Assembly (NCBI RefSeq): GCF_031769215.1
Contig: NW_026782953.1
Span: 62,001 to 126,000, forward strand
DNA: 64,000 bases
From: Ylistrum balloti
Taxonomy: Eukaryota
Direction of reading: 5' to 3'
Below, piece by piece: positions 1-16,404 of this stretch. The notes beneath the pieces are model-generated. The model ran no database searches. It saw nothing but the letters and a program-made list of their open reading frames with translations, and had not been told where the DNA came from. Made by a program: the position numbers and the translations under genes. Within the stretch, counting starts at the first letter, position 1. Every line of letters begins with the position of its first letter.

Positions 1-832
1 GCTATTAGAGTTTGAGAAGGGGTCAAGGATATCCATTATTTTGTATCCACTTAAATTGCTATTCCAGTTTGAGAAGGGGTCAAGGATATCCATTATTTTG
101 TATCCACATAAATTGCTATTCGAGTTTGAGAAGGGGTCAAGGATATCCATTATTTTGTATCCACATAAATTGCTATTCGAGTTTTAGAAGGGTTCAAGGA
201 TATCTATTATTTTGTATCCACATTAATTGCTATTCGAGTTTGAGAAGGGGTCAAGGATATCCATTATTTTGTATCCACATAAATTGCTATTCGAGTTTTA
301 GAAGGGTTCAAGGATATCCATATTTTTGTATTCACATAAATTGCTATTCGAGTTTTAGAAAGGGTCAAGTATATCCATTGTTTTGTATCCACATAAATTG
401 CTATTCGAGTTTTAGAAAGGGTCAAGGATATCCATTGTTTTGTATCCACATAAATTGCTATTCGAGTTTGAGAAGGGGTCAAGGATATCCATTATTTTGT
501 ATCCATTTAAATTGCTATTCCAGTTTGAGAAGGGGTCAAGGATATCCATTATTTTGTATCCACATAAATTGCTATTCGAGTTTGAGAAGGGGTCAAGGAT
601 ATCCATTATTTTGTATCCACATAAATTGCTATTCGAGTTTTAGAAGGGTTCAAGGATATCCATATTTTTGTATTCACATAAATTGCTATTCGAGTTTTAG
701 AAAGGGTCAAGTATATCCATTGTTTTGTATCCACATAAATTGCTATTCGAGTTTTAGAAAGGGTCAAGGATATCCATTGTTTTGTATCCACATAAATTGC
801 TATTCGAGTTTGAGAAGGGGTCAAGGATATCC
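1..832. repeat. 57-bp tandem satellite, ~14.6 units, truncated by the window start
   Basis: Unit GCTATTCGAGTTTGAGAAGGGGTCAAGGATATCCATTATTTTGTATCCACATAAATT recurs at 1, 58, 115 ... 799. It generates the 19-aa periodic ORF 12..956. Confidence 0.97.
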
Positions 833-1146: not shown

Positions 1147-3318
1147 ACCGTCCACGAGATCTTTCCCTATTGTTTCGTCTCGTCATTCATAGCCACATTA
1201 TGGGTTGTGTATTACTGGACTTTTGACACAACGTACATATAGCAGGAAATCGTTAAGAATCTATAAATATATAACTGCGCCTCCAAAGTAGGATATTAGA
1301 AATATGTATGGAATTAAATAGCACAAAAACACAAAATATCTTAATTGTCAACCCTTTAATATTTCGCCATAAGCAGAATATTCGAGTACAACAGTAGAAC
1401 AATACCGAAGGTTACGTCCAAAGACAGTGTCTAGGAGACAACAGCCAGGGCCGTAAAGTACAGAAAAGGGGATTCACCGTCCAAGAGGACAAGTTCGTGG
1501 AGTGAAAATGACTGGTTGTTTAATGATTTTCCTTAATGTGGAATATTTTCACATAAGAAAATTGACCAAAATCAGGAAAAATTTTCACTTTACAAAAATC
1601 CATTGTGTACAGTGTGTGACGAACAGACAGCTCGGTTACAACATGTGAATTATAGTTATTCCACACAAATACCTAAAACAATACACGTATGATACTCATA
1701 AAAATATATTGCCTCAAAAAGAGGTACTAATTACTGTTCACCTAACTGGTGACTTGACATGACACTGTATTTGTATCAAACATTTGACGACGTATCAAAA
1801 CCTTTTGATGACGTTCAATTTTAAAACCTTATTACAATTCTTCAGATTCACTTCAACGTTTCACATACCTTTCTACAGACATTAAAAGCTGTCAAACGTT
1901 GAGGAGATTTAGAAGAATTCTCGTACCATGTGGTACTACATTAATCAATATATCACTCCAGCTTACTGCTGAAGTAATGTGTATAACAACCACATGATAG
2001 AAAACAACGATCTTATTTGGTGTGGAAGTCATGTGATAAGGTTTTGTTTACCCCTAGAGTTAATCTTAGAATCATATTCCGTTCCCTATAATCGTATCTT
2101 CATCTTTTGGCACAACCTTCCATCATACTCTTTCTCACAACACTAACTCAAACGCACGTTGGCACTTCCATTAATCTAACGCAACAGTCAATGTACCTTA
2201 TTTTGACAAACGCGCTGCCTCAGCTACCCAAATAGTCCCCACTAGGTTCCGAAGACCCGAACTCTACCAATAGTGCTATATCACAATCAATTTTAAAGGA
2301 CTGTATTATTTAGTATAACGCTTCATTATCTGATGTCTTGCTTGAGAAAAACTAGTTTACAAAACATGATACAACGATTTGCCTATGTATAATAGTTTCA
2401 TAGTACTGGATGGAGAACACAATGATACAATTTGACGCCAGCAATGCGTTTAAGGGAAAATTAAAATTCTTAATATAAGAAATGCAGGAAATATAAAAGT
2501 GCATGTAATACTTAAAGGACCAACTTGGTCATACTTCAAGTGTGTCTCCCATGTCTCTTATTGATGGATGACGTCCCGAAGTTCTACCCAAGTTTGATGT
2601 TCGTACCTGTCTTCTATATGATGTCCCTAACTTCACGTAAGCATTACACTAGTTTCTGTCTCCCCTGATAGATCATCCTAAATTGCATTGATACTTTTGT
2701 AACTGTCGCTCTTGTAATACTGATTCCAGCATTGTGAAAGAACGTATTTCAACAATTAAAGACGTATTCTATTTCCTCCTAAGCATGCAATACATAGCTA
2801 CATAATCGCATAAGTATAACATGTTCATCAGTTACCCTACCGATTTGTCTGGTTTCTTAACGAGAACAATATGTTCGATGGAGTATTGATGTAGGGCGGA
2901 TGAGTTTTCCTGTCCTATCGCTAGGCTATAATGACTTCTGATTAAAGATTCTTTTGAATATTACATAACTGAAATATATTTGTATATAGAAGATGAAACT
3001 GTAGTTAATCGTAAATGTCCTTTGATAATGTTCGTAATTACAATCTTAAAATTAGAAATAAACTAAAAGCGCTTAATTAATTGAAAATAAACTCTTCACG
3101 TACCGCAAAATATTGTCCGAAAAAGACTAACTACTTCAATATAGTAAAGGATGTTCGTAACATTGTGTGATATTTACCACAATCAACGCATAACTGTTCA
3201 GCGATTTTCATACCATTTTCAATATCTGACTACACTCTCTCGTTACTCTCGCTGGTGTAAAAGCGTAATCTTTTCAGTCGCACCCACAAAAGCACTGTTA
3301 ATGGGTCGACATGTCCAC

Positions 3319-6300
3319 TCATTTCGCCCCGATGATGTAAGCACATAGTTCCTGCCCATCAGTCAGATCTGGGTGTTGGTTCATGACAGTCCTAACTTTC
3401 TGTTCTGGGAACAGTCCACAAAGGTGGAAGTATACGCTGTAACGGGAGTCACTATGAGGTATTGGTGCATCCTCGACAAACATTGGCGAAGACGTCCTAG
3501 ATGTTTCCGCCGCCGATTGACTATGGCAAGCGCTTTGACTATTCGCTGGCAGGTTAGATTGGCCAATGAGGCCTCGGTTTTGATTGGAAACTTGAGAGGC
3601 TATCCCTGACTGGCTTCTTGGAATGTCACCATAGCGATTTTCACCTGGAGTATAATTTTGAGAACAGAACCCTGTGGACGACGAAGTAGAAGAAACCACA
3701 GATGGTCCCCAGATGTCGTCTTCACGTTTTGTGAGGATTCCCGTACGAAAATTGGGATCTTGTTCCTTGGCTTGGGAAGGCCGAGGCTGCACCAATTGAA
3801 ACGAACGAGATTGCTGGTGTGGTGTATTTCGAAGAAATCCTGGAAAAAGTGCAGGTTGTTTAATTTGTCCAGGAGCAAAACCTCTGTCGCTGAAAGACCA
3901 AGTGGTGTTTCCAGCATGATGTTTTTGTGGCTGTGTGTAAGTCTGACTATGTGGATATGTCGGAGCACCGTGGGTATATCCTCGGTTGAATTGATGCGAT
4001 ACCGGCTGTTGATGAACTTCATATCCGGGGCCGCGTGCAACGTAACTAGAGGAAAACCCTTCTCCTTGCTGGAAGTCTGCTCTTGAACCTTGGAATTCGC
4101 AAAAATTATAGTCAGTTTGTTCCATATCCCCACCTATATTATGTAATTGTGTGTCTGAAATGCTGTTTTGACGAGCCATTTTCTCGATTGGTGCAGCTGC
4201 AGCTGCACTCCTAAGTTGAGGAACTTCCGGAGCGCTCTGCATTCTGGCTAGTGTAGCATGCTCAACATTTAAATGTCTCCCACTAATTCCAGAAAAGAAA
4301 GGTTCGTTACATCCTCTGGTGTCCTGCTGAATATTCTGCATATGGTGCATCATTCCAGAGTCAATGGCGCCTGCACCAACATTACCAAAATTTTCTGACC
4401 CACGTACATCGTAAAATCCTTGTTGTCTCCCTTGAATAGGTTGCTGTCGTCTCTGGTTCGCCTGTTGACTTGCGTATCGTGGGTCATACGACAACTGTTG
4501 ATGTAGATGGCGATGCGTTCGAGGATCAGTTGCTCCCTGGAACGACATTTGCCGGCTAAGTTTTTGATGACGAGGTTGTGGCTGCTGCTCAGCGGACAAC
4601 ATCTGGTGCGACAAAATTTGGTTTTGCGGTTGTGGCTGACTGTACTGGGCTAGAGGAGAGTTACACCGATGTAGAGCAGCACGTGACTGTTTTAATTCTG
4701 TGGGAGGTGTCCTGGTGAGGTCACGCTCCTCCGGAACTTTCTGTCGTGCTTTTTTGTCTGCGGCCTCGTCCGAAAGCTTCTTTGCCAAAAGGAGATGCCC
4801 ACTCAGAAACTGTTCTTGTGGTTTTATGGGTTGTGTAGGACTACCTCTTTGTAGCGGCGAAGACGACCGGGAATTGATTTGGTCACTGGTTGTTAATGAC
4901 GCATGTAAGGATTCGCTCGTCGGTGCCATCTTCATAGTAGACGACTCTGCGTCTGAAGAGACGCTTTCCTCTTGCTTCTGCTTTTCTTCTTGTTCTGCTT
5001 GTTCCATTTTTTTCCTATAACCCGTGAGCTTATCATCGTACGATTTCCATTTTTCAGTCTTTTCCGCGCTGTGACTTGTCTGTTCTACCTTCTGTGCTGG
5101 TGGATTATCCGCGGCCAAGTCCCTGAAGTCGGGGGGAGACCCGATACCTACAGGATCAACAGGAGCTAGAGAGCTTGTTCGCTGCAAAGACATCTTTTGC
5201 TTCAATTGCTGCTTTCGGACGAGCACTTTCTTTTTATCGCCTGAAAATATCAAAACATACCGTTTCAAATCTGCAGCTATATGATCAATGTAAAATTTAA
5301 AAAAAGCGTTGTGTCAAGTAAGAGTTAAAAAATTGCACAGTGTGCATGTTATTGGTCACCATTATGTGCAAGTCAAATATATTTCCTTTTGTTGTTGTAT
5401 AAAAAATAATGAAATTAAATAACGAAATATTAATTTTATACCTTCCGCGTTTTTGCTCCCTCTCTCCATCAGATCTTGCATCTTCTGTTTAGTCTGTTCA
5501 GCCATTATATCTGTGACAGATTTCTGAGGATTATTTCCTCGCTCTGGGTGGTAGAACTTGCACTTGTTGCCATATGTACACTTCTTAATGCCGTATGGAC
5601 AGACCGGTGGCAAAGACAGCGGGACCGTTGGTTCACGACTCAGGAAGTTGTCCAGACTAGGTCCGTGTCTACCAAGTGGATCATCTGGAGGCATGAACCT
5701 ATTACAGGATAGCGGCGGTAAATACACATCTTTAACAAACATATATGCTATAATATAGTGTATTTCTAATGAAATCTAAGAAAACGCAAGACAAGAAATG
5801 AGTATCAATGGAAGTTATATATTGTGTAAATTGCAATATGATTGGCTACCAGTATTCCAACATAGTACAAAAGCACTAAACCGCGTAATAGGGTAACTAT
5901 GTAGGATTATTTTCAAATTAACTGCGTGTGTTTTTGAAATATCCTATTTAAATTATCTGATCAATGTTTCCCAATGCCCTTTGAAACTGGGGTTACAGTG
6001 GTCTCCTAACAACCTATGTATATGGGAGAGTGCACGAAAACTGGTAGCACAAGCTGCGAATTTCAACAATTTGGGGTTGGGGAGGGGGCAGTTGTTGTAT
6101 GAGGAACACTGACGACATCAAGGAAGTGATCGATAACTTTCTTATACTTGAAGTGTTAGGGTATTTCATGATTTTCCTAAAATTGTAATTTATTAAAATT
6201 TCGAAGCTTTTCGGCGGTTGGCTTGATCTACAATGTTAATATTCACAATCAAAATCCATGCTGAAATTAATGTACGATCGCTGAAATTTCAATCAAATGT

Positions 6301-9300
6301 GTGGGAACGGTCTGGACATGCACATTCGGTTGTGTTTTTGGAAGCTGACTAGCTCAAAATAAAAATCTTGAGTGAATTCCGTACCTGTCATTGACGAAAG
6401 AGTACATGAGAAGTCGTTCCTCTACAACTTTTTTGTACTCTGGATTCTCGTTGAGAAGGTCCCTATAATTGTCATTGGAAACCACAATGCCTCCTGTTTC
6501 TGCAGCTAGTTTGAGAATGTAACGATCATCGTAGCAGACGACACGTTTCCCACCAATTCGTCTGGCCGGCGTGAACACCAACACCTTTTCTTTTTCCAGA
6601 TGAATAAGAATATCTTGATCTGTACAAAGTGAAATATCATGAAAATATTTATCCTTTCATTCTCTTCCCGAATTCATGGACGCCCTCATCATACAATAGT
6701 AAACATTATCTTGCTTTCTTAAAACCCCATACCCACCTATCCGACAGCACTGATGTCATCCAAACCCTACTATCAAGCACTTCTGGTCCTAGTAATTCTT
6801 TAATAGTTATTAATCGGAATTTGAAGAAAAAAAACACATATTATTTTATTGTATGTATGTTATGCTATCCACTATAATATACAGTACTCAGAGACATAAA
6901 CAAAATCTTTAAATAGAAAGAAATTCACACCGACAATTTATATTAAGTCTGATATTACATTTTCTTTAATATTGTAAATGAGAGTCGGATAATCAGAAGA
7001 CTTGTTCATACGTTAGTGATGATATATGGGAATTTTCCATCACAATAAGTGGGTTATTTACGGGGAAGTAAATAGTTACTCGGGATGTAGTGAAAGCATG
7101 GCTTGTCTGTAACTATATACAGAGATGTGAAAATCGTTCACACAATTATATTTAGACATATCGTGATGCAGAAAGATGATAAAGATGATCTAATGCTTAT
7201 ATTAAACCATAGCAAAGATCATTGTAAATGTAAAAACGCTCTGTTAATGGTATGGTAAAAAATACACAAGATTTTTTTTTATCTTAACACAATATGAGAA
7301 TACCAATAAGGATCGTTAATTTTGCACCATTTTTTCGTACAAGATATGTCAAAATGTATATCGTGTTCTAGTTTATATACGATGGAAAGGTAAGTGATCT
7401 CTTCCATGTTTGTTACTGGGCACACGTAGCCGATAAACGAGATACGCCCAACAACATCGGTTTGTACACCAGTGAGGAGAATCAAATATACGGTCAGTGG
7501 TGTTGCGGTGTTAGTCACGTCTGAATTCCGAGGTGGTTACATACCTGCTGTAATTGTTTAACATGAATTTAGACATGTTTTGATATTCAACACTTTGTCT
7601 CCAGTCATCAGGTCGAAACAGTTGTAAGATAAAGTTGATTTCTCGTTTGCCAATATATTATAATTATACCTGATTTGTGTTGAATGGTGTCATTCGATTG
7701 TGTCCTTTGTACAGTCTTTTCACAAATGTAGGGAGAGAAAAACTTAAGTCAATAGATAATCGCATGACACTGTACAAACACATGACTGTATCATATTGTC
7801 CCTGGAAATATTTCGCAAACACCGCCTCCTCAATAATGTATATCATACCGCATGTATGCAAATAAGTCATCTAAATACCAAATTATTTATCACGATAGGC
7901 ATTACCATACTATTTAGTGCAGTTTAACTAATTAAATCAGTCGAAGAAGAGTCACCTTGTATGGTTCAATAACCCTGTAAACTATGATCGACTGTAGAGG
8001 GAATATCTACCTCTGATTTTGGAGTCCGGTCGTGACGTTTCCTTGCGCCACTGTGGCACAAACACTGTGATATCTTTGTGCCCCCGCATTCGAAACCACT
8101 CCACTGCCAATTCAATACCTCGACATGAGAACACTTCCTTGTTTCCATGACTACAAAAAATAAAAAAAAAACTTTGTGATTATTACGCGCTCATCAGACG
8201 AGGGAATTATATTCTTGGAGTCTATTCTGCAACTGAAACTCCAAGACTGTAAAACGAAGTATATCTCTTTTGTTTCAGTGGATAGTCATATTTCACTTAC
8301 ATGTATGCATTTTGTTCGAAAATGTTTGTCTTCAAATTTATATTCATGATTAATTATTTGATATTTAAAATTCGTTTTATTGTTCGGACTAGTATACACT
8401 GTACTTTGCTTAAAACGGCATATGGAACACTTGCCAAAGAGACCGGGGAAACGTATCCCCTTTCGTTACGTTTTCAGAAGGGGTACGCCCATCACTTCGA
8501 TTCTTACACATCAAATGTATATTCCTACAATAGACTGAGACGGGCGTGCCAGCCTAATATCTGACAATTATTTCATCGATAATATTAAGATTATGTGGGG
8601 GTATTAGATGAATTGTAATCTAAGATGTGATTAAGCAAAACGCCCATGTAAACAAGCGAGGCCATAACGAAAAGGTAGGATACCATGCATTCAACCTTAC
8701 GTGTTTTAGTTGATTGTCACATTGGGCGTGGGCGTTGATCCAACAGGTTTACTACGTCAATAAGTGGGAGGTGTGAAAATTCGATCTGGTTTGATCATGA
8801 TCTAACCAGTGAATTTAAAGTGCGATATATAAGTCCTTTCTAATACTGCTTCTATCTTTATTTTGCTAGCTTCTCATTGGTTTAGTGGACATCCGATTGC
8901 CCACGAACAATGTCTGCTGGATTCAGCAGTGTTTCTAGAAGGCGATCAAATGTGGATCACCAGCAGAATCGTGGGTTTTCCTCTGTGTTTTTTACTAAGG
9001 GGAAAATTGAAGAGACCAAAATAGATCTTTGTTTCCATGGAACACTCGGGATCTTGATATTTTTCTTTTCCTCTCTTGGATCCATGACTATATTGAGGAT
9101 GTTAAACCCCGTAAAAATCTGAAGGGCATTTTTCCTCTTTCAGTGTAAAATTTCTACTTTTAATAAATCCACTTATCGCTGCATAACTATCATCAAAAAT
9201 GTTGTACGATGTTCTCCGAATAACTTCCTAAAGTGGTGTTTTTTAAAGGTTTCTATTCGAACTAGCTCCTATCATCCTGTACCTATCCATATGTACCTGC

Positions 9301-12300
9301 TCGAACCAAAGCTATCTTGTACCAACTACCAACTTTTACCTACTTCTACTGAAATCCTATTTTACTCCTATAAATCTACAACTGCTATCCATCTACACTA
9401 ACTCGGTTATCTTGTGGTATTGACACACGTGTAGCGATTCCGCTCGAACCAACTGTTGTGTATACGTGCAGTATAGTTGAACCAACGGTGAAAAGTTGGT
9501 GCTTGTATGGGCTAATAGCGATTATTTCTTGTAGTTTACAATTGTCCCCATGTCTAAGGGCATAGATGTTACACGTAATAATTTTGTAAATACGTGAACC
9601 TAATAATATTTCCATTTAAAACCTGTTACCCTGCAATTCAGGGTCGTACTTTAACTCATGTTTATTCTATAATTATATGACGTCAGTCCAGTTGTACTGT
9701 TCTAAGATCCATTTACAGTTGGAGACTGAGTTAAGTAAGCGTGTTCATCAAAAACGTTTTGTGTACCTATAAATATGGTCAAGACCGAGTATTCCTGAAA
9801 TGCACTTCAGTGTTGAATGCTGTTTATTCAAGAATAAACACTGTGTTTTTCTCTGGTGACAGGATGTAACAGGTACGACTCCTTCATAACAGCGACAAAC
9901 ACGTCTACACCTGACAAGCTGGAGTCGACTGGGCACACCTTATTACTCACAATATTTACATATTTCCGGTATATTTTAATTAAACGTTTTATCTAGTATT
10001 AGAGTAAACAAGAAATCTGGCGATACTAGATATCCCTAATATCGACATAAACATCCGACAGAACACGGAGACTCAGCATCCATAATCCAATTTTCCTTCA
10101 GGGTTATCAACATACCTAGTAACTACACTGGTTTGTACTACCTATTCGTAGGTTCGCCATGCATACCAATACACAACAAATTTATTCAAATACAACATTT
10201 ACCCTTTTTCCATATGAAGATGGATTTACTTCATCTCTTTAAAACTGGGACAATACGTCATTTACTACTATTTACTAGTGAACGAAAAGAAAATTACTTT
10301 GACCAACCGAAATAGATAAAAAAAAACATGCTATGCGCCTAATACAGTTAGTTGAAAAGGGCAATGCAATGGGGATCTAAATACCTGAAGTTTACAAAGA
10401 AACTTTCTCTACTTTACTGTCGGTTACGAAATGTTCGTCAAAACTACTACAAGCCATGGTGTTTAGCCCATGCCTACCGGTATTAATACCAACGATACCG
10501 TCCTAACCCATGACTACCTATAACAACAGTCCTATACCCTTGACTACCAAAAACAACGGTCCTAACTCCATGACAACCACAACTTTCATCGGTCCTTGCC
10601 CTTTAACAAATACCTAAGGTCCTAACCCCCAAGACTACCAATACAAACAATCTTTTCCCAGTGACAATAAATAAAAAAATGGTCCTTATCCAGTGAAAAG
10701 CGATACCAACGGTATCGTACTTACTCAATGGCCACCAGTACTTGGTGACCGTCTTTATTTGGACCTACCTCATGGCCACATTGCTGCCGTCAATGACAAC
10801 AGGTCTGAATTTGTCGACGAACTCCAATTCCCGTCCTATGTGATCGGGAGTGCTGTGGTGTGGAGACACAGGTGCTTTTAATCCAAAGTCACTATCTAAT
10901 GGATCAAGTCTAGATTCCTCATCCGGAATTACACATTTTCCCAATTTTATAAGTTCTAATAAAATTTCATTCTCACTTGCTTCATGGCCTAATTTTTTTA
11001 TCACAGTTTTCAATTGAATTTCTGTATAGCCCAACTTTAAGGCAAACTCCACCTTCCCGCCATATTCTACACCACTGTGGAGCTTTTCTACCTCTTCGTC
11101 AGAAGAGCTCTTGAGTTCGGTGTGAGGACTAGATAAATTGAGGTGCGTTAATTGTTTTTCGATGTGGTGTGCGTCTGATTGCGTTTTTAAGTCATCTTTT
11201 GATATTGTCGTATCGACAGTCAAATCACTAACATCGTCTAAATCACGTGTTGGAACGGAATCACAACCTCGTTTTAAGATACCATCAGAAAAATCCACAA
11301 AGGAATGACATGCTGGTTCGCTGTCAGTTTGCAAACTCGAATCATCTTCACTCGTAAGGATTTGCACATTTTCACAATACACATTTTCATCATCATCAGT
11401 GGAATCTTGCAATGTCTGCATTTCTGGTGTACACTGTGTCCTATTTTCTTCAGAATCCTTTTTCGCTAAAACATGGTCATTTTCATCATTTTCGTCGCAT
11501 TTCTCCCCTGTGTTTCTAAGGTTCAGTGAAGAATCGACTACACCTTTATTCAGCATCATGTTTATCATTAACTCGGCGGATCTGACATTGTCTACTTTTC
11601 CATAGACACGAAGTATATTGGTTTCTCGATCGAGCTCCAGTACGGCCTGGGAACACTGCTCTATCGAGTCCCGATTTTCTATCAACATTGTTAATTGAGA
11701 TCCAGTTAAACTAATCGTAAATGTGGCCCTCTCCTCTCCTTCAGAAGTCAGTGATGAAATATAGTTCTAAAATAAACAAAATTAATGACATTAAAAGTTC
11801 AAAGCACATATATATAAATTGACCATATCATTAAAAGTCCAAAAAAGTACCATGGATAGGCCCACACTCCGATTGTATATGCTTACATTATACATCTCAC
11901 TGGAAAAATCCAGTAAATCTACCACAGTATATCTATATAAATGTTACATCTGTCGACAACTCAAGACACAATACTAAATGGATAAAGGTTATGTCTGCAT
12001 GACGTGTAATACAGCGTGTAGTTCATCACGTATCTGCAAATATAATTTAATATGCAGTTCACATTAATGTAGACTCTTAACTTGTACACAGTTTGAAGTA
12101 AATTTGATTTTTAATCAAAGGAAATTCAGAAAATGTCAATTTAATTTGTGTACTGTTAGGCACGTCCAAAATTTAACGTACGCGTATCTATGATTAATTC
12201 TGATGACTGCTTATTTATCTCTGGGAACGAACATAAACAGTACTTGTGGTGTACTGATTCACGATCTATATTAAAACTTTTTTACCTAGAAAAGATACAT

Positions 12301-14817
12301 ACATTGCAATAAAACATTGAATTCTACACTATATATTTGTGTCATGTACTGTACTGATAGCAAATATTATAAATATACCTCGTAAAACGACAATTACCTG
12401 CTGGCGCCACGACAGCGTTGTAATGATTGATATGCATTATATAGCTTGGTTCTAAGTACGTGTAGGTACAACTGTGTCTACAGAGAGACAACGGCAAGTT
12501 CTAGCTCAATCCAGCTTTGAGGATATATATAAGTATACACTGATGGTTATTTCAACATGACCGGATTACTGCAACCTATTTGCACTGGTCAACCTTTGGA
12601 AACTACTGAATGATGGTGTATCTTTCTTATATATACGTTTTATCGGTACATTACAAATGTATACGTGTGTGTGTCAAACAGGGAAGTTCGAATAAAGTGA
12701 ATTCCCTTCAATAAATTAAGATACGTCGTGACTTATAATAGGACGTTTAAGTGTCGATAAAAATTGATACACAGCAGAGGGGCCCGCTTGGTCAACAGTT
12801 ACTGTCTTATCTTGATAAATAGTAGGGAAGGGCATCTAAAAGCAACATACATTCCTTGAACCTCGGTGTCATAAATATGTAGATATGGGACAAGACCAGG
12901 TGGTAGGGCTGATAAAATGTAGGAAGACTGATAACAAATCCAGCACAACATTACAGTCATTGCTCACATAAATGCGACTCGCAAGACTCATCAGTCTATC
13001 GTCACACTTAAATGTGAAACGATTTTAATCAAATCAGAGGAACTATTGGAACGCAAAGCCATAGCATAATGCGTCCATCATCACTTCTTGGGTTATTTCA
13101 TGGTTTTGTGTTCCTTTTAAAAGAACACGTTTCTGGCAGTCCTAGCCTCCTATATATTTGTGAAATAAGTCCATGACTCTCTTCCGAAAAACTTTTATAT
13201 GGGAAATATAGAAAGGTTCAATAACTCTATCTCTCTATTCGACCAGGAGACCAGTACATTACACAACTACATTGTACCTATATAGTTATATAGTTCACCG
13301 TCAATATGAACGAATTTTTTCACAACATGTCGACACGTCTGAGTTAAATTTTTAATAACAGTGACCATGTGTTCTTCAAATATACGTAGATGTTATATAC
13401 ACTGTACTTACCTATCAATATCCGTCTCAGCTATATTGAATTTAACGTACAGATACGGACCTAGAAAGGTCTTAGTTCGTAGTACAGGCCACCAAGTACA
13501 ACAGTGTAAAATCCTCAAAACTTAGTACTTCAAACAAACTTGATACGCAGTAAAGTAGCTTCCTCTCCCTTTACACGAAAGTATTACCCACGCGTTTCTC
13601 CGACATTGTGATCGTTATGACTGGGTACGAAATACTTGTCATCCACAATGTAGTACTTGTCTGTTGTTCATATTGACTGGTCATATAAATGATTACGAAT
13701 TTGAACCATGAATCAGGTGCACCCACACAATTTTAGTATAATACACACTAGGGGAGAACTCACTCAAGCAGAACGTCTATATTTACTGCTTATTCCTTCT
13801 TCGTCTTAAACAACCGACATTGTGACAGTATTACTAAGTTCAAGTACGTTGAAATAAATACACATTATGAGCAATCATAATAACTATATATAACATATTT
13901 TCTTTAAATCTGACAAATACGTCGAAACTGGGACGTGTGATGCAAGTCCTTTTTCGAAACGAAACTTTTTTGCGAACATGATAGCGTTTAAATATGTGCT
14001 ATATCAGGCCTCTATACGAACACATTAAATTGTTTTCAACTTACATAATTAATTCAATAATTTACTATAGTAACCTACTAACACGCAATATTGACACATC
14101 CGCGGACTCAGAATAGATCGTAACTGTTCCGAGATTGATATCTGGCTTGGGTTAATATTGCAAAACTGGAGATACACTGTACATTGCTTGATATTAACAA
14201 TACTTCAGAATTCTGTTATATAATGTTGACACCAGTTCAAAAACTGGAACGATAATACAGCGTCAACAGTGATATTACATTTTCCCCCTATTATGAGACT
14301 TCATGAAAGTCAACTTCCTGGTTGAATACATGATGTGTAGTAGTTAAACCATTCAACAGCTAAGAAAAAGAACATGTACAGATAATTATTGTATCCGTAT
14401 TGTAAAACATGTAAAATAGTCTTATCGTCGTGTTCGACGTAATGTTGTAATTAAGAACTCAATATAGTCTATCCGGATCATTTGTATCTCGTTTAGAATC
14501 GCCTTAGTGTGGAAATTACGTCCCCTCTTCCAAGATCTTCGCCCAAAGATATTTACAACTACAGCTTCTCCGTTAGTTGTTTCTTTACTTACTTTCGCCT
14601 TTTGAACATTTTCCGATGAAGTCTCTGACGACAAAAGAATTGTCGCACGGTAAGATTCCTCACAAACATCATTGTCGATGTTAGGCCTACCAATCAGGAA
14701 GTTCTCATGATTCGGTGGCAAGACCACACGCACCCCAAACAAGCATTCTATGTGCTCTTTAACGCCTAATAACAGGGATAATTTGGATCCTGCAATCTTC
14801 ACATCATCTGTGTTCAT
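3319..14817 (-). CDS. ZC3H12A: Regnase/MCPIP (ZC3H12)-family endoribonuclease with an N-terminal N4BP1-like di-KH region, ~1258 aa, 6 coding exons
   Basis: complement(join(3319..5240,5442..5698,6385..6619,8011..8150,10769..11766,14593..14817)); all junctions GT-AG and in phase (3777 nt). UBA-like [12 protein letters not shown]; PIN/NYN motifs [59 protein letters not shown]; [19 protein letters not shown]; [22 protein letters not shown]; C-terminal [18 protein letters not shown]. An alternative in-frame acceptor for the last exon lies at 5270. The paralog letter (A-D) cannot be assigned; this is probably a pro-ortholog. Confidence 0.93.
10495..10700. repeat. Degenerate ~30-bp minisatellite in ZC3H12 intron 2
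   Basis: About 6 diverged copies of GGTCCTAACCCATGACTACCAATAACAAC immediately inside the donor of exon 2. Confidence 0.65.
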
Positions 14818-16404
14818 TGTACAGCATACGAGAAATAAATTTATCTCTCATTCTGATCCGTAAACTCTCCATAAACACCGTACAATTCCAGGGTTTACTC
14901 CATTCAGAATGTGTATTTTCAGATTTAGGTCGCCAGACGGCGCTGTTATTTGACCTAAAAGGTCAGCTATTCAGCCGAGCGCAACGAAATAAACAAGACG
15001 CCCGGAATGCATGTCATTGAGACCCATTAACTCGATAGATCTCCAGAATATAGACATAGTGTTTACGTCACATCAGATAGATGAATCATTTCGACAAACT
15101 GATTATCATAATGTAATATATTCGCAAGACAATACAATTCACAGGTATATATATTATATAAATAACCTTACTCTTATCCAGAAATTTACGTAGATTTTTA
15201 CTTTAAACCATTTTTTTGGTTTATTTCGCAGTTTACTTTAATTACTCCAGTATTAATTTAAGAAGGTGTAACTAAGATAAAAAGGCTAGATTTTACAATG
15301 AACTCAGGCACGTTAAATTGAACGATGATTATGTAGTGGAACTATCCTTTCTCAGATTTGGAAACTTTTGAAAACCGTGACAAGAAATCAAGAACACTTC
15401 AAGGCGGGAACCGGGAGGAAGGGGGCAAGAACACTGAGTTGAATGTGTTACGCGTTTGTCAATAATGAGATTGGTAACCATTATTTTGACAAATAAAGTG
15501 AATTAGTAAGTACTCGAAATATACTTCCAATTTACCCACTCTTCGTGTTTAGTTTTCAGAATTATAAAAAACGAAGTACTTGATATTTTGTCAATACAAT
15601 CATGTCAACATGAAATTGATAAGAGAAGAGAAAAGTGGAGGTTACGTTATTCAAAGAACCAATACAGACCTTTCAATAGTGGACCGCAACATCCAACTTT
15701 GATTAAATTACCCGAAGGCTTATTATAGATGTATAACGAATATAACAGTAATTTTATTAGGACGTGATGTTAACGTTGTCAACTTAAAAAGACAAAAATC
15801 ACGTTTAGCACGTTCATCAGTTTTCTCATATGTCCAGAGTAGATTGAACATTTAACGATGGATGTCATATTATGAAAATGAATGTACATAAGATTATAAA
15901 TGTAAAACCGTTTATTTCCGGCACGCTGTTATATCCAGGTTTGTTTCAATTTGACTCCCCGTTAACAGCGAACTTTACCTTCGGGCCCTGCAACATATAC
16001 GACTGTCTTTATCAAATAAACAACCGGAAATTAGATAAATTAATTAGATAATATATATACATGTGTGACACTACGTACACATATTAAATTACAATATAAA
16101 AAGGACAGCATTGTTAGTTTTGTGTGTTTGCATACCATGTAATATAGGAGTATATTTTCCACCAGTGCAATATAATAATGTTGACCAATTTATTTTTGAT
16201 AGTCAATTTAAGAATTTAAGTGAATAAAGAAAAAGAAAACCCAACACTGAGCCATTAAACGAATCCAGAAGATGAATAATGCTGTATACGTCATGAAAAC
16301 TGCAGCTTATCATAAGCATTTCTCTGACATAACGAAAAGAAGCAGTAAGTCAACTTACAGCATTGGTAGCAAATGGTTTAATAAGAGTAAGTAATACACG
16401 TCTG

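What the first reader, a model, noticed from the sequence alone, without database searches (positions are those of the whole stretch)
11590..14817. Regnase with an N4BP1/KHNYN-type di-KH N-terminus: a possible ancestral KH-UBA-NYN-CCCH-CTD immune RNase
Seen: exon 1 ([33 protein letters not shown]...SENVQKAK) splices in phase 0 to NYISSL...[45 protein letters not shown], in frame with a complete Regnase (UBA-like, PIN/NYN, CCCH, C-terminal domain). Knowledge, from recall: human N4BP1 begins VLDEF..EKAELLEQSRGRIEGLFGVSLAV...AVHSAK|EYIKGIC, with GxxG-less KH folds and an intron at the AK|EYI position. N4BP1/KHNYN have KH domains but no CCCH; vertebrate ZC3H12A-D have CCCH but no KH. Inference: one protein unites both architectures and may represent the common ancestor of the two antiviral/anti-inflammatory RNase families, or a lineage-specific fusion.
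Basis: partly seen in the sequence, partly recalled or inferred. Interest (0 to 1): 0.82.

Follow-up and report, generated by a model that had tools for sequence, protein, structure and literature searches.

The report
Scallop Regnase with N4BP1-type di-KH head
This scallop gene encodes an ordinary Regnase (ZC3H12) RNA-cutting enzyme whose N-terminus is a real N4BP1/KHNYN-type double KH domain. That layout is not a scallop novelty: it is the widespread, ancient form of the family, also found in spiders, amphioxus and fish and amphibian ZC3H12B.

Summary
The window comes from the scallop Ylistrum balloti. A six-exon minus-strand gene (CDS 14817 to 3319) encodes 1,258 aa, identical to NCBI LOC132563974.

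- **Splice junction.** The exon 1|exon 2 junction (14593|11766, phase 0) is reproduced exactly by intronless full-length transcript contigs of a related scallop. Pecten maximus isoform X1 has it too.
- **N-terminus.** Residues 1-158 pass Pfam's KH_N4BP1_1st cutoff. A 39-sequence profile hits the N4BP1 di-KH crystal structure (E 1e-9, both modules). An AlphaFold model (pLDDT 88) superposes on KHNYN and N4BP1 at Z 14-15 across both KH modules, whereas other KH proteins match one module only.
- **Rest of the protein.** It is canonical Regnase: UBA_6, a NYN domain with all catalytic Asp residues, a CCCH finger and Regnase_1_C. The NYN tree places it inside the ZC3H12 clade.

The architecture is not special to scallops. 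At least 52 sampled proteins share it: bivalves, a gastropod, a chiton, spiders, a scorpion, a mite, amphioxus, and vertebrate ZC3H12B from gar, sturgeon, teleosts, coelacanth and amphibians. Public Pfam annotation already tags many of them.

A lineage-specific fusion is rejected, and an ancient bilaterian layout is supported. The papers I searched still confine this di-KH to KHNYN/N4BP1/NYNRIN, so interest is modest. The scan's notes hold no earlier record of it.

The parts
14818..14935 (-). 5' UTR part of exon 1 (minimum extent)
   Evidence: The related-scallop transcript contig L002, nt 1-118, aligns continuously upstream of the ATG up to 14935. The block is also conserved with Pecten.
14593..14817 (-). 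Exon 1 CDS, residues 1-75: KH1 strand 1, a long unbroken helix, strands 2 and 3, and the start of the last helix
   Evidence: Pfam KH_N4BP1_1st matches on this exon alone at E 2.4e-4. On the joined protein it scores 28.7 bits (whole protein) and 35.8 bits (residues 1-175), against a cutoff of 27.
11767..14592 (-). Intron 1 (GT..AG, phase 0), splitting KH1 at AK|NYI
   Evidence: It contains two blocks conserved with Pecten: 12938-12777 (88%) and 12469-12350 (81%).
11518..11766 (-). Start of exon 2, residues 76-158: end of KH1 and the whole of KH2 (beta-alpha-alpha-beta-beta-alpha, no GxxG)
   Evidence: AlphaFold model pLDDT is 93-98 here. The A1 profile aligns to N4BP1 6Q3V through chain residue 150. 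There are weak generic KH Pfam hits.
11059..11517 (-). Acidic D/S/E/T-rich linker, residues 159-311, predicted disordered
   Evidence: pLDDT is 43-58. Linker length varies from 40 to 150 aa among homologues.
10939..11058 (-). UBA_6 (Regnase N-terminal UBA-like domain), residues 312-351
   Evidence: Pfam E 1.9e-14. The profile hits Regnase-1 NTD 2N5J at E 1.7e-12.
5650..10806 (-). NYN/PIN nuclease domain, residues 396-549, spread over the end of exon 2 (to 10769), exon 3 (8150-8011), exon 4 (6619-6385) and the start of exon 5 (from 5698). Introns are included in this span.
   Evidence: Pfam RNase_Zc3h12a E 6.9e-67. It scores 339 bits to ZC3H12C 7NDJ against 177 bits to KHNYN. D401, N404, D485, D486, D504 and D508 are present.
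5542..5601 (-). CCCH zinc finger, residues 566-585 (C-x6-C-x5-C-x3-H)
3319..5240 (-). Exon 6: Q/S/P-rich region, Regnase_1_C domain (residues 1215-1256, window 3453-3328) and the TGA stop (3321-3319)
   Evidence: Pfam Regnase_1_C E 1.8e-11. Regnase-1 CTD 2N5L matches at E 8e-6.
1533..2006 (-). Conserved 3' UTR block
   Evidence: It aligns to the transcript L002 5552-6028 and to Pecten L001 20533-21036 at 74-79% identity. Small invariant hairpins are present.

Best explanation
This is the Ylistrum balloti orthologue of the Regnase/ZC3H12 endoribonucleases. It precedes the vertebrate ZC3H12B/C duplication and keeps the family's ancient full-length layout: di-KH, disordered acidic linker, UBA_6, NYN nuclease, CCCH finger, long Q/S/P-rich region, and a C-terminal UBA/CUE-like domain. 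Shown here: the gene model, the domain identities, an intact catalytic Asp set, the N4BP1/KHNYN-type orthogonal di-KH fold (predicted), and the wide taxonomic spread. Inferred mechanism: the NYN domain, helped by the adjacent CCCH finger, cleaves target mRNAs as in vertebrate Regnases. The di-KH lacks GxxG in both modules and has the unbroken KH1 helix seen in KHNYN. It therefore most likely does not bind RNA canonically and instead serves as a protein-docking or localisation module, as reported for KHNYN (inter-KH cleft) and N4BP1 (EDC4/P-body association). Evolutionary reading: Regnases and N4BP1/KHNYN are collinear paralogues (KH-KH, UBA, NYN, C-terminal UBA/CUE-like) that differ mainly by the CCCH finger. 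The di-KH was lost in vertebrate ZC3H12C but kept in fish and amphibian ZC3H12B. ZC3H12A/D and amniote ZC3H12B were not tested here.
For: Gene model: it is identical to the NCBI protein P0169. Exon ends are matched by intronless transcript contigs of a related scallop and by Pecten isoform X1. Domains: the Pfam scan of the joined protein gives KH_N4BP1_1st above its cutoff, plus UBA_6, RNase_Zc3h12a and Regnase_1_C, with a weak, sub-cutoff CCCH match; the CCCH finger itself is shown by its pattern and by its alignment to ZC3H12C. di-KH homology: the 39-sequence profile hits N4BP1 6Q3V at E 1.1e-9 over profile positions 3-155, and KHNYN 9CS9/9HTS at about 1e-5. Fold: the model has pLDDT 88 and pTM 0.78. 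Foldseek's top five hits are N4BP1/KHNYN at TM about 0.6, against about 0.3 for other di-KH proteins. VIA-align gives Z 14.9, 14.4 and 14.2 over 132-141 residues spanning both modules; the next hits, at Z 11.1 or less, cover one KH only. In the ESM Atlas the best match is a chordate ZC3H12B cluster (TM 0.73), followed by N4BP1 and KHNYN clusters. No G..G motif occurs in residues 1-175. Regnase identity: the NYN+CCCH region scores 339 bits to ZC3H12C against 177 to KHNYN. The tree follows the species phylogeny, with N4BP1-type NYN on a 2.46-substitution branch outside. Spread: 52 sampled proteins have a complete di-KH followed by UBA_6. Purifying selection on KH1/KH2 gives dN/dS about 0.22. Functional analogies come from PMC11997328 (KHNYN di-KH does not bind RNA; cleft arginines are needed) and PMC13586276 (N4BP1 KH domains are needed for EDC4 and P-body association). 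N4BP1 also has a divergent UBA between its KH and NYN domains (PMC11032371).
Against: No RNA data exist for this species, so use of exon 1 here is inferred from a sister species and from annotation. Pecten and Mizuhopecten also have annotated isoforms X2 that start at Met102 inside KH2, so a KH-less product may coexist. Pfam's KH_N4BP1_2nd model does not hit KH2; only generic KH families match it weakly. The C-terminal helical bundle that makes the KHNYN/N4BP1 domain 'extended' is not seen: alignments stop at chain residue about 148 and residues 159-300 are modelled as disordered. The GxxG-like motifs that N4BP1 needs for EDC4 binding (QSRG, GAES) are not conserved in sequence (alignment; PMC13586276), so the partner may differ. 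The protein-docking role and the nuclease activity are inferred, not tested. Whether CCCH was ancestral to both families is unresolved, because no non-bilaterian outgroup was sampled.
Confidence: 0.85

Rival explanations
1. A scallop- or mollusc-specific fusion, in which a Regnase gene captured an N4BP1-derived KH exon.
For: A 2.8-kb intron separates exon 1 from the rest of the gene. The published literature describes KH and CCCH as mutually exclusive in this superfamily (PMC7226360, PMC11997328).
Against: The same di-KH plus UBA_6, NYN and CCCH layout occurs in other bivalve orders, a gastropod, a chiton, spiders, a scorpion, a mite, amphioxus and vertebrate ZC3H12B. The NYN tree mirrors the species tree.
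Confidence: 0.02
2. Exon 1 is an annotation artefact or a minor isoform, and the main product starts at Met102 (ATG 11688) and lacks a functional di-KH.
For: Pecten maximus and Mizuhopecten yessoensis each have an annotated isoform X2 beginning MLIE... at the equivalent Met. Many ORF-style predictions begin there. Conserved blocks lie in intron 1, with a possible donor at 12398|12397. No RNA run exists for this species.
Against: Three independent run assemblies of a related scallop give the full-length exon 1-containing mRNA. Exon 1 is under purifying selection (dN/dS 0.28). It completes a high-confidence KH fold conserved across phyla. Starting at Met102 would cut KH2 in half. The 'ORF-style' starts are explained by gene callers that cannot splice.
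Confidence: 0.08
3. The gene is the mollusc N4BP1 orthologue (the 'N4BP1-like' protein of the literature) and has secondarily gained a CCCH finger and a UBA_6 domain.
For: It has KH_N4BP1_1st and a weak UBA_N4BP1_C match at the C-terminus (E 0.006). PMC9888277 reports one N4BP1-like protein in molluscs.
Against: The NYN+CCCH region is 72-76% identical to vertebrate ZC3H12B/C but 47-49% to N4BP1-type NYN. It scores 339 against 177 bits. Tree placement agrees. The C-terminus fits Regnase_1_C at 44 bits against 17 for the N4BP1 model. The gastropod N4BP1-like C-termini printed in the supplement of PMC9888277 differ clearly from gastropod Regnase C-termini.
Confidence: 0.03
4. The di-KH is a working RNA-binding module that adds a third RNA-recognition surface to NYN and CCCH.
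For: KH is classically an ssRNA/ssDNA-binding fold. KH2 superposes on RNA-bound PCBP and Nova KH domains at Z about 11 and rmsd 1.4-1.7 A.
Against: Neither module has GxxG, and this holds across the 39-sequence alignment. KH1 has the unbroken helix that replaces the GxxG loop in KHNYN (PMC11997328). KHNYN di-KH showed no RNA binding, and N4BP1 KH domains act through EDC4 (PMC11997328, PMC13586276).
Confidence: 0.15

Closest known systems
Vertebrate ZC3H12B (Regnase-2/MCPIP2) as found in gar, sturgeon, teleosts, coelacanth and amphibians
   Same: It has the same domain order: KH_N4BP1_1st (gar 46.6 bits), a second KH, UBA_6, NYN, CCCH and Regnase_1_C. The NYN+CCCH region is 72-74% identical. 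An ESM Atlas chordate ZC3H12B cluster is the best structural match to the scallop di-KH, at TM 0.73 and rmsd 2.5 A over 148 residues.
   Different: The scallop protein is about 300 aa longer, through a longer acidic linker (128 against 58-100 aa) and a longer Q/S/P-rich region. Its CCCH spacing is C-x6-C rather than C-x5-C. It predates the vertebrate B/C duplication.
Human/mouse Regnase-1 (ZC3H12A) and ZC3H12C, the studied members
   Same: They share the UBA-like NTD (2N5J), a NYN domain with the same Asp set, an adjacent CCCH finger and the C-terminal domain (2N5L).
   Different: No di-KH was detectable in any of about 70 vertebrate ZC3H12C proteins sampled. ZC3H12A/D and amniote ZC3H12B were not sampled here. 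Published domain schemes for these proteins show no KH (PMC7226360).
N4BP1 / KHNYN extended di-KH domain (PDB 6Q3V, 9CS9, 9HTS)
   Same: There are two type-I KH modules in the unusual orthogonal packing (Z 14-15 over both modules). KH1 has one continuous helix and no GxxG. Sequence-profile homology is E 1e-9. The whole proteins are collinear: KH-KH, UBA, NYN, C-terminal UBA/CUE-like (PMC11032371).
   Different: Those proteins have no CCCH finger, and their NYN is a distinct, long-branched type. The scallop protein lacks the C-terminal helical bundle after KH2. Its KH2 also lacks GxxG, which KHNYN keeps (GAQG). The QSRG/GAES motifs of N4BP1 are not conserved.

Membership tests
Regnase / ZC3H12 (MCPIP) endoribonucleases | NYN/PIN domain of the RNase_Zc3h12a type with the catalytic Asp set (human Regnase-1 D141, D225, D226, D244, D248) | tested here: met
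   Pfam E 6.9e-67. The motifs VVID401GSN, CYD485D486, SND504NYRD508 are present.
Regnase / ZC3H12 (MCPIP) endoribonucleases | A single CCCH zinc finger directly after the nuclease domain | tested here: met
   C566-H583, C-x6-C-x5-C-x3-H. It aligns to the ZC3H12C finger in 7NDJ and to 2N5K. The Pfam CCCH models hit below their cutoffs.
Regnase / ZC3H12 (MCPIP) endoribonucleases | UBA-like N-terminal domain (UBA_6) and Regnase_1_C C-terminal domain | tested here: met
   UBA_6 scores 53.8 bits and Regnase_1_C 44 bits, both above cutoff. PDB 2N5J matches at E 1.7e-12 and 2N5L at E 8e-6.
Regnase / ZC3H12 (MCPIP) endoribonucleases | NYN sequence groups with ZC3H12 rather than with N4BP1/KHNYN | tested here: met
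   Quick ML tree of 38 rows and 214 columns. The window sequence sits within the lophotrochozoan Regnases, chordate ZC3H12B/C form the sister group, and N4BP1-type NYN lies on a separate 100% SH-aLRT branch. ZC3H12A/D were not in the sample.
Regnase / ZC3H12 (MCPIP) endoribonucleases | Mg2+-dependent endonucleolytic cleavage of stem-loop mRNA targets | not testable with these tools
   This needs recombinant protein and an RNA cleavage assay.
N4BP1/KHNYN-type extended di-KH domain | First KH module of the N4BP1 type: no GxxG, and helices 1 and 2 merged into one helix | tested here: met
   PF23050 scores 28.7 bits (whole protein) and 35.8 bits (residues 1-175) against a cutoff of 27. The model shows helix 10-27 unbroken. 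No G..G motif occurs in residues 1-175.
N4BP1/KHNYN-type extended di-KH domain | Second type-I KH module homologous to N4BP1 KH2 | tested here: met
   The model has a beta-alpha-alpha-beta-beta-alpha fold at residues 88-158 with pLDDT 93-98. The profile alignment to 6Q3V runs through chain residue 150. Caveat: Pfam KH_N4BP1_2nd itself gives no hit.
N4BP1/KHNYN-type extended di-KH domain | Orthogonal KH1-KH2 packing, unlike other tandem KH domains | tested here: met
   In the predicted model only: Z 14.9 with rmsd 2.5 A over 132 residues to 9CS9, 14.4 to 9HTS and 14.2 to 6Q3V. Dim2p and IMP tandems reach both modules only at rmsd 10-14 A.
N4BP1/KHNYN-type extended di-KH domain | C-terminal helical bundle packed on KH2 (the 'extended' part) | tested here: not met
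   Structural alignments end at about residue 157 of the model and about residue 148 of the chains. Residues 159-300 have pLDDT 43-58 and no helices. The UBA_6 domain does not take the bundle's place, and its profile does not hit 6Q3V, 9CS9 or 9HTS.
N4BP1 / KHNYN gene family (as a member) | KH-NYN-CoCUN/CUBAN protein without a CCCH finger, and with an N4BP1-type NYN | tested here: not met
   A CCCH finger is present. The NYN domain scores 339 bits to ZC3H12C against 177 to KHNYN. UBA_N4BP1_C scores only 16.8 bits against a cutoff of 27. Tree placement agrees.

The most novel reading that the evidence does not exclude
[quoted passage not shown] N4BP1/KHNYN lost the finger, and ZC3H12C (untested here: ZC3H12A/D and mammalian ZC3H12B) lost the di-KH. 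On this reading, the di-KH's original job, still active in invertebrate Regnases and fish/amphibian Regnase-2, is to dock the nuclease onto the decapping/P-body machinery (an EDC4-like partner). The same module was later re-used by KHNYN for ZAP-dependent antiviral decay.
Probability: 0.25. Interest if true: 0.55.

Novelty: new member of a known kind. Interest (0 to 1): 0.35.

Why it matters
The gene itself is ordinary: an annotated orthologue with a layout shared by dozens of public sequences. The useful point is a correction of the textbook picture. [quoted passage not shown] Reviews contrast KH-bearing N4BP1/KHNYN with CCCH-bearing MCPIPs (PMC7226360). The data here show that the di-KH is also the default N-terminus of invertebrate Regnases and of fish and amphibian Regnase-2. 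This ties the two immune RNase families together domain by domain. It dates the di-KH to at least the bilaterian ancestor. It also offers tractable systems, such as zebrafish or gar zc3h12b and bivalves, to ask what the di-KH does when it sits next to a CCCH-guided nuclease.

Tried and rejected
1. Single-sequence searches of exon 1 and of KH2 against PDB sequences gave only noise: 7S globulin, and repeat-summed polyubiquitin. A profile was needed.
2. The ESM Atlas feature search with exon 1, and with residues 1-175, gave nothing usable.
3. RNA evidence in this species was unavailable. The one run found is genomic DNA and spans the intron.
4. I tested whether Regnase's UBA_6 corresponds to the C-terminal helical bundle of the KHNYN/N4BP1 ex-diKH. 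The UBA_6 profile hits only Regnase-1 NTD. In the 363-residue model the UBA does not extend the KHNYN/N4BP1 superposition. The idea is rejected.
5. I asked whether the conserved intron-1 blocks are an alternative first exon for the KH-less isoform. A CAG|GTAATT site exists in the window, but conservation is higher downstream of it than upstream, and Pecten has AC|GT there. This stays undecided.
6. The 3' UTR block was folded with three sequences. Its hairpins are invariant, so nothing can be concluded about structure.
7. Looking up taxon names for unnamed KH2-bearing fragments yielded mostly anonymous ENA/Logan records.
8. The scan's own notes have nothing on N4BP1, NYN or Regnase in this genome. 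The only nearby note concerns another gene.
9. Not done: a search of the Y. balloti genome for a separate N4BP1-like gene, sampling of non-bilaterians, sampling of amniote ZC3H12B and of ZC3H12A/D, and intron positions in N4BP1 genes.

Full report
**What is in the sequence.** The finding lies on the minus strand. Reading 15000 to 3000 and assembling the exons by script gives six exons, all with GT..AG introns:

| Exon | Window coordinates |
|---|---|
| 1 | 14817-14593 |
| 2 | 11766-10769 |
| 3 | 8150-8011 |
| 4 | 6619-6385 |
| 5 | 5698-5442 |
| 6 | 5240-3319 |

The CDS is 3,777 nt and encodes 1,258 aa. Exon 1 ends ...CAAAAGGCGAAA|GTAAGT and exon 2 begins TTTTAG|AACTATATT.

**Is the gene model real?** A word search with the Pecten maximus orthologue returned P0169, NCBI 'uncharacterized protein LOC132563974 [Ylistrum balloti]'. 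It is identical over all 1,258 residues to my hand-built protein, so the window is from the scallop Ylistrum balloti.
- Pecten maximus isoform X1 (P0151, 1,264 aa) aligns end to end at 79% identity. It has the same junction and the same GTAAGT donor.
- P0170 (1,254 aa) is encoded without interruption on about 6.1-kb contigs assembled from three runs (SRR19746226-8). Such contigs can only be mRNA, because the gene spans over 11 kb.
- Those contigs align to the window in blocks whose ends coincide with every exon end. In particular, contig positions 1-337 match 14935-14593 and positions 338-1350 match 11766-10769.
- The same alignment shows a 5' UTR reaching at least 14935 and a conserved 3' UTR block at 2006-1533.

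For Y. balloti itself no RNA run was on offer. The only run holding the stretch covers the intron and is genomic.

Selection supports coding. Against the transcript species, dN/dS values are:

| Region | dN/dS |
|---|---|
| KH1 | 0.23 |
| KH2 | 0.22 |
| Linker | 0.33 |
| UBA | 0.06 |
| NYN+CCCH | 0.02 |

**Is the N-terminus an N4BP1/KHNYN-type di-KH?**
- *Pfam.* Exon 1 alone matches KH_N4BP1_1st weakly (E 2.4e-4, 21.5 bits). The joined protein passes the curated cutoff of 27 bits, with 28.7 bits on the whole protein and 35.8 bits on residues 1-175. The second module gets only weak generic KH hits and none to KH_N4BP1_2nd.
- *Profile.* I aligned 39 N-termini of homologues (A1) and searched PDB sequences with the profile. 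The best hit is the human N4BP1 KH crystal structure 6Q3V (E 1.1e-9), aligned over profile positions 3-155 and chain residues 2-150, so both modules are covered. KHNYN 9CS9 and 9HTS follow at about 1e-5.
- *Model.* AlphaFold2 on A1 gave pLDDT 88 and pTM 0.78. The secondary structure is E2-9, H10-27, E30-32, E57-64, H68-82 | E88-94, H97-105, H107-114, E117-121, E126-132, H133-158. KH1 has a single unbroken helix where a GxxG loop would sit, as described for KHNYN (PMC11997328).
- *Fold searches.* Foldseek ranks 6Q3V, 9HTS and 9CS9 first at TM about 0.6, while other tandem-KH proteins score about 0.3. VIA-align gives Z 14.9 (rmsd 2.5 A, 132 residues), 14.4 and 14.2 for those three across both modules. 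Every other entry either matches one KH (Z 11.1 or less) or reaches both only at rmsd over 10 A. In the ESM Atlas the best shape match is a chordate 'ZC3H12B' cluster (TM 0.73), then N4BP1 and KHNYN clusters (0.72-0.69), then generic KH proteins (0.5 or less).
- *Differences from the KHNYN/N4BP1 'extended' di-KH.* No G..G motif exists anywhere in residues 1-175, so KH2 lacks it too. No helical bundle follows KH2. A 363-residue model shows residues 159-300 as disordered, and the UBA_6 domain does not substitute for the bundle.

**The rest of the protein.**
- Pfam gives UBA_6 (312-351), RNase_Zc3h12a (396-549, E 7e-67) and Regnase_1_C (1215-1256). CCCH models match around 565-585, below their cutoffs.
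- The catalytic residues D401, N404, D485, D486, D504 and D508 and the finger C566...H583 are all present.
- The NYN+CCCH segment scores 339 bits to ZC3H12C (7NDJ), 333 to ZC3H12A and 298 to ZC3H12B, but 177 to KHNYN.
- A quick ML tree of this segment (38 rows) follows the species tree. The window groups with Pecten inside the lophotrochozoans. Chelicerates and other arthropods branch separately. Amphioxus is sister to vertebrate ZC3H12B+C. The N4BP1-type NYN sits on a separate long branch.

The gene is thus a Regnase that predates the vertebrate B/C duplication, not an N4BP1.

**How widespread is the layout?** The exhaustive representative search with exon 2 and two word searches supplied about 330 proteins. 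The architecture appears as follows:
- Amphioxus 'probable ribonuclease ZC3H12C' (P0055) has KH_N4BP1_1st at 58.8 bits together with UBA_6, NYN, CCCH and Regnase_1_C.
- Precomputed public Pfam annotation lists PF23050+PF18039+PF11977+PF18561 for Solemya, Saccostrea, Pinctada, Mytilus ('MCPIP'), Mercenaria, the chiton Liolophura ('rege-1-like') and several transcript contigs.
- Local HMM searches add a gastropod (Nucella), spiders, a scorpion, a horseshoe crab (KH2 part) and Varroa mites.
- Spotted gar ZC3H12B scores 46.6 bits for KH_N4BP1_1st.
- A search with the gar N-terminus found the same four-domain annotation in sturgeon, tarpon, eels, salmonids, pike, characins, catfishes, milkfish, shad, coelacanth, a caecilian, axolotl and a frog.

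In all, 52 sampled proteins have a complete di-KH followed by UBA_6, with a 40-150 aa linker between them. By contrast, none of about 70 vertebrate ZC3H12C proteins has a detectable di-KH.

The architecture is therefore the ancient bilaterian state of the Regnase family. It was kept in ZC3H12B of fishes and amphibians and lost in ZC3H12C.

**Relation to N4BP1/KHNYN.** Amphioxus has a separate N4BP1-like gene with an ex-diKH (PMC11997328) in addition to P0055. The supplement of PMC9888277 prints the C-termini of gastropod 'N4BP1-like' proteins. These differ plainly from the C-termini of gastropod Regnases in my set. The two families had therefore probably already separated before protostomes and deuterostomes split, and both kept the di-KH.

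N4BP1 is also reported to have a divergent UBA between its KH and NYN domains and a CUE-like C-terminus (PMC11032371). Regnase_1_C and UBA_N4BP1_C cross-match weakly. The families thus look collinear domain by domain, apart from the CCCH finger. Whether the finger is ancestral cannot be decided without non-bilaterian outgroups. Whether Y. balloti itself has an N4BP1-like gene could not be tested.

**Likely mechanism.**
- *Shown:* an intact Regnase catalytic core with its CCCH finger, and a di-KH with the KHNYN/N4BP1 packing but no GxxG.
- *Inferred:* RNA is recognised and cut by NYN+CCCH as in vertebrate Regnases. The di-KH acts as a protein-docking or localisation module.

The inference about the di-KH rests on two published results. 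KHNYN's di-KH does not bind RNA and needs its inter-KH cleft (PMC11997328). N4BP1's KH domains are required for EDC4 association and P-body localisation (PMC13586276). The N4BP1 motifs implicated there (QSRG, GAES) are not conserved here, so the partner is open.

Annotated isoforms starting at Met102 in Pecten and Mizuhopecten suggest that a form without the di-KH may also be made.

**Novelty and score.** The gene is an annotated orthologue with a domain layout visible in public Pfam annotation, so I rate it a new member of a known kind. I found no paper noting a di-KH in any Regnase. Recent structural papers state that it is confined to KHNYN and its paralogues. The cross-family link is therefore a modest but real correction, and I set interest at 0.35.

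**Operators' rules.** No N stretches occur in the window.

Noticed in passing
window 1-832: A 57-bp tandem array (14.6 copies, 93% matches) lies beyond the conserved 3' UTR block of the gene. It reads as a long repetitive ORF on the + strand.
   Followed up: no
window 12777-12938 and 12350-12469 (intron 1): Two intronic blocks are conserved with Pecten maximus at 88% and 81%, the first higher than the coding exons (about 80%). A possible donor CAG|GTAATT lies at 12398|12397. They might relate to the KH-less isoform X2 (start Met102, ATG at 11688) annotated in Pecten and Mizuhopecten, or they might be regulatory.
   Followed up: partly
window 1533-2006 (3' UTR, minus strand): A roughly 470-nt 3' UTR block is conserved in three scallops, with several invariant small hairpins (for example TCACC-AGTTA-GGTGA and CCTC-TTTTT-GAGG). 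It is a candidate site for autoregulation, as known for Regnase-1's own 3' UTR. Three sequences are too few to test covariation.
   Followed up: partly
L001 11814-13510 (Pecten maximus intron 3): Pecten carries about 40 tandem copies (spacing mostly 42 bp) of a unit derived from the last 31 nt of exon 3 and its donor region (window 8034-8004). The array is absent from the Ylistrum window.
   Followed up: no
P0162 versus P0038 (Varroa destructor isoforms); P0156 (amphioxus isoform): The Varroa isoform has a 26-aa insert exactly between ...KNAQ and EFLLSV, the position equivalent to the AK|NYI intron. An amphioxus isoform starts at the same point. This suggests the phase-0 intron inside KH1 is old.
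   Followed up: partly
P0172, P0173 (Microtus ochrogaster, Chionomys nivalis 'N4BP1'): These vole entries contain four NYN domains and four N4BP1 C-terminal UBA domains in tandem. They are either a local amplification of the N4BP1 3' half or an assembly or annotation artefact.
   Followed up: no
P0094 / P0168 (Logan and JGI, 1,011-1,014 aa): A Regnase N-terminal half (UBA_6 + NYN) is joined to a Macoilin C-terminal half. It may be a read-through or a chimeric transcript in an unnamed organism.
   Followed up: no
window 10500-10579 (intron 2): A short 30-bp tandem repeat (2.7 copies) lies just downstream of the exon 2 donor.
   Followed up: no
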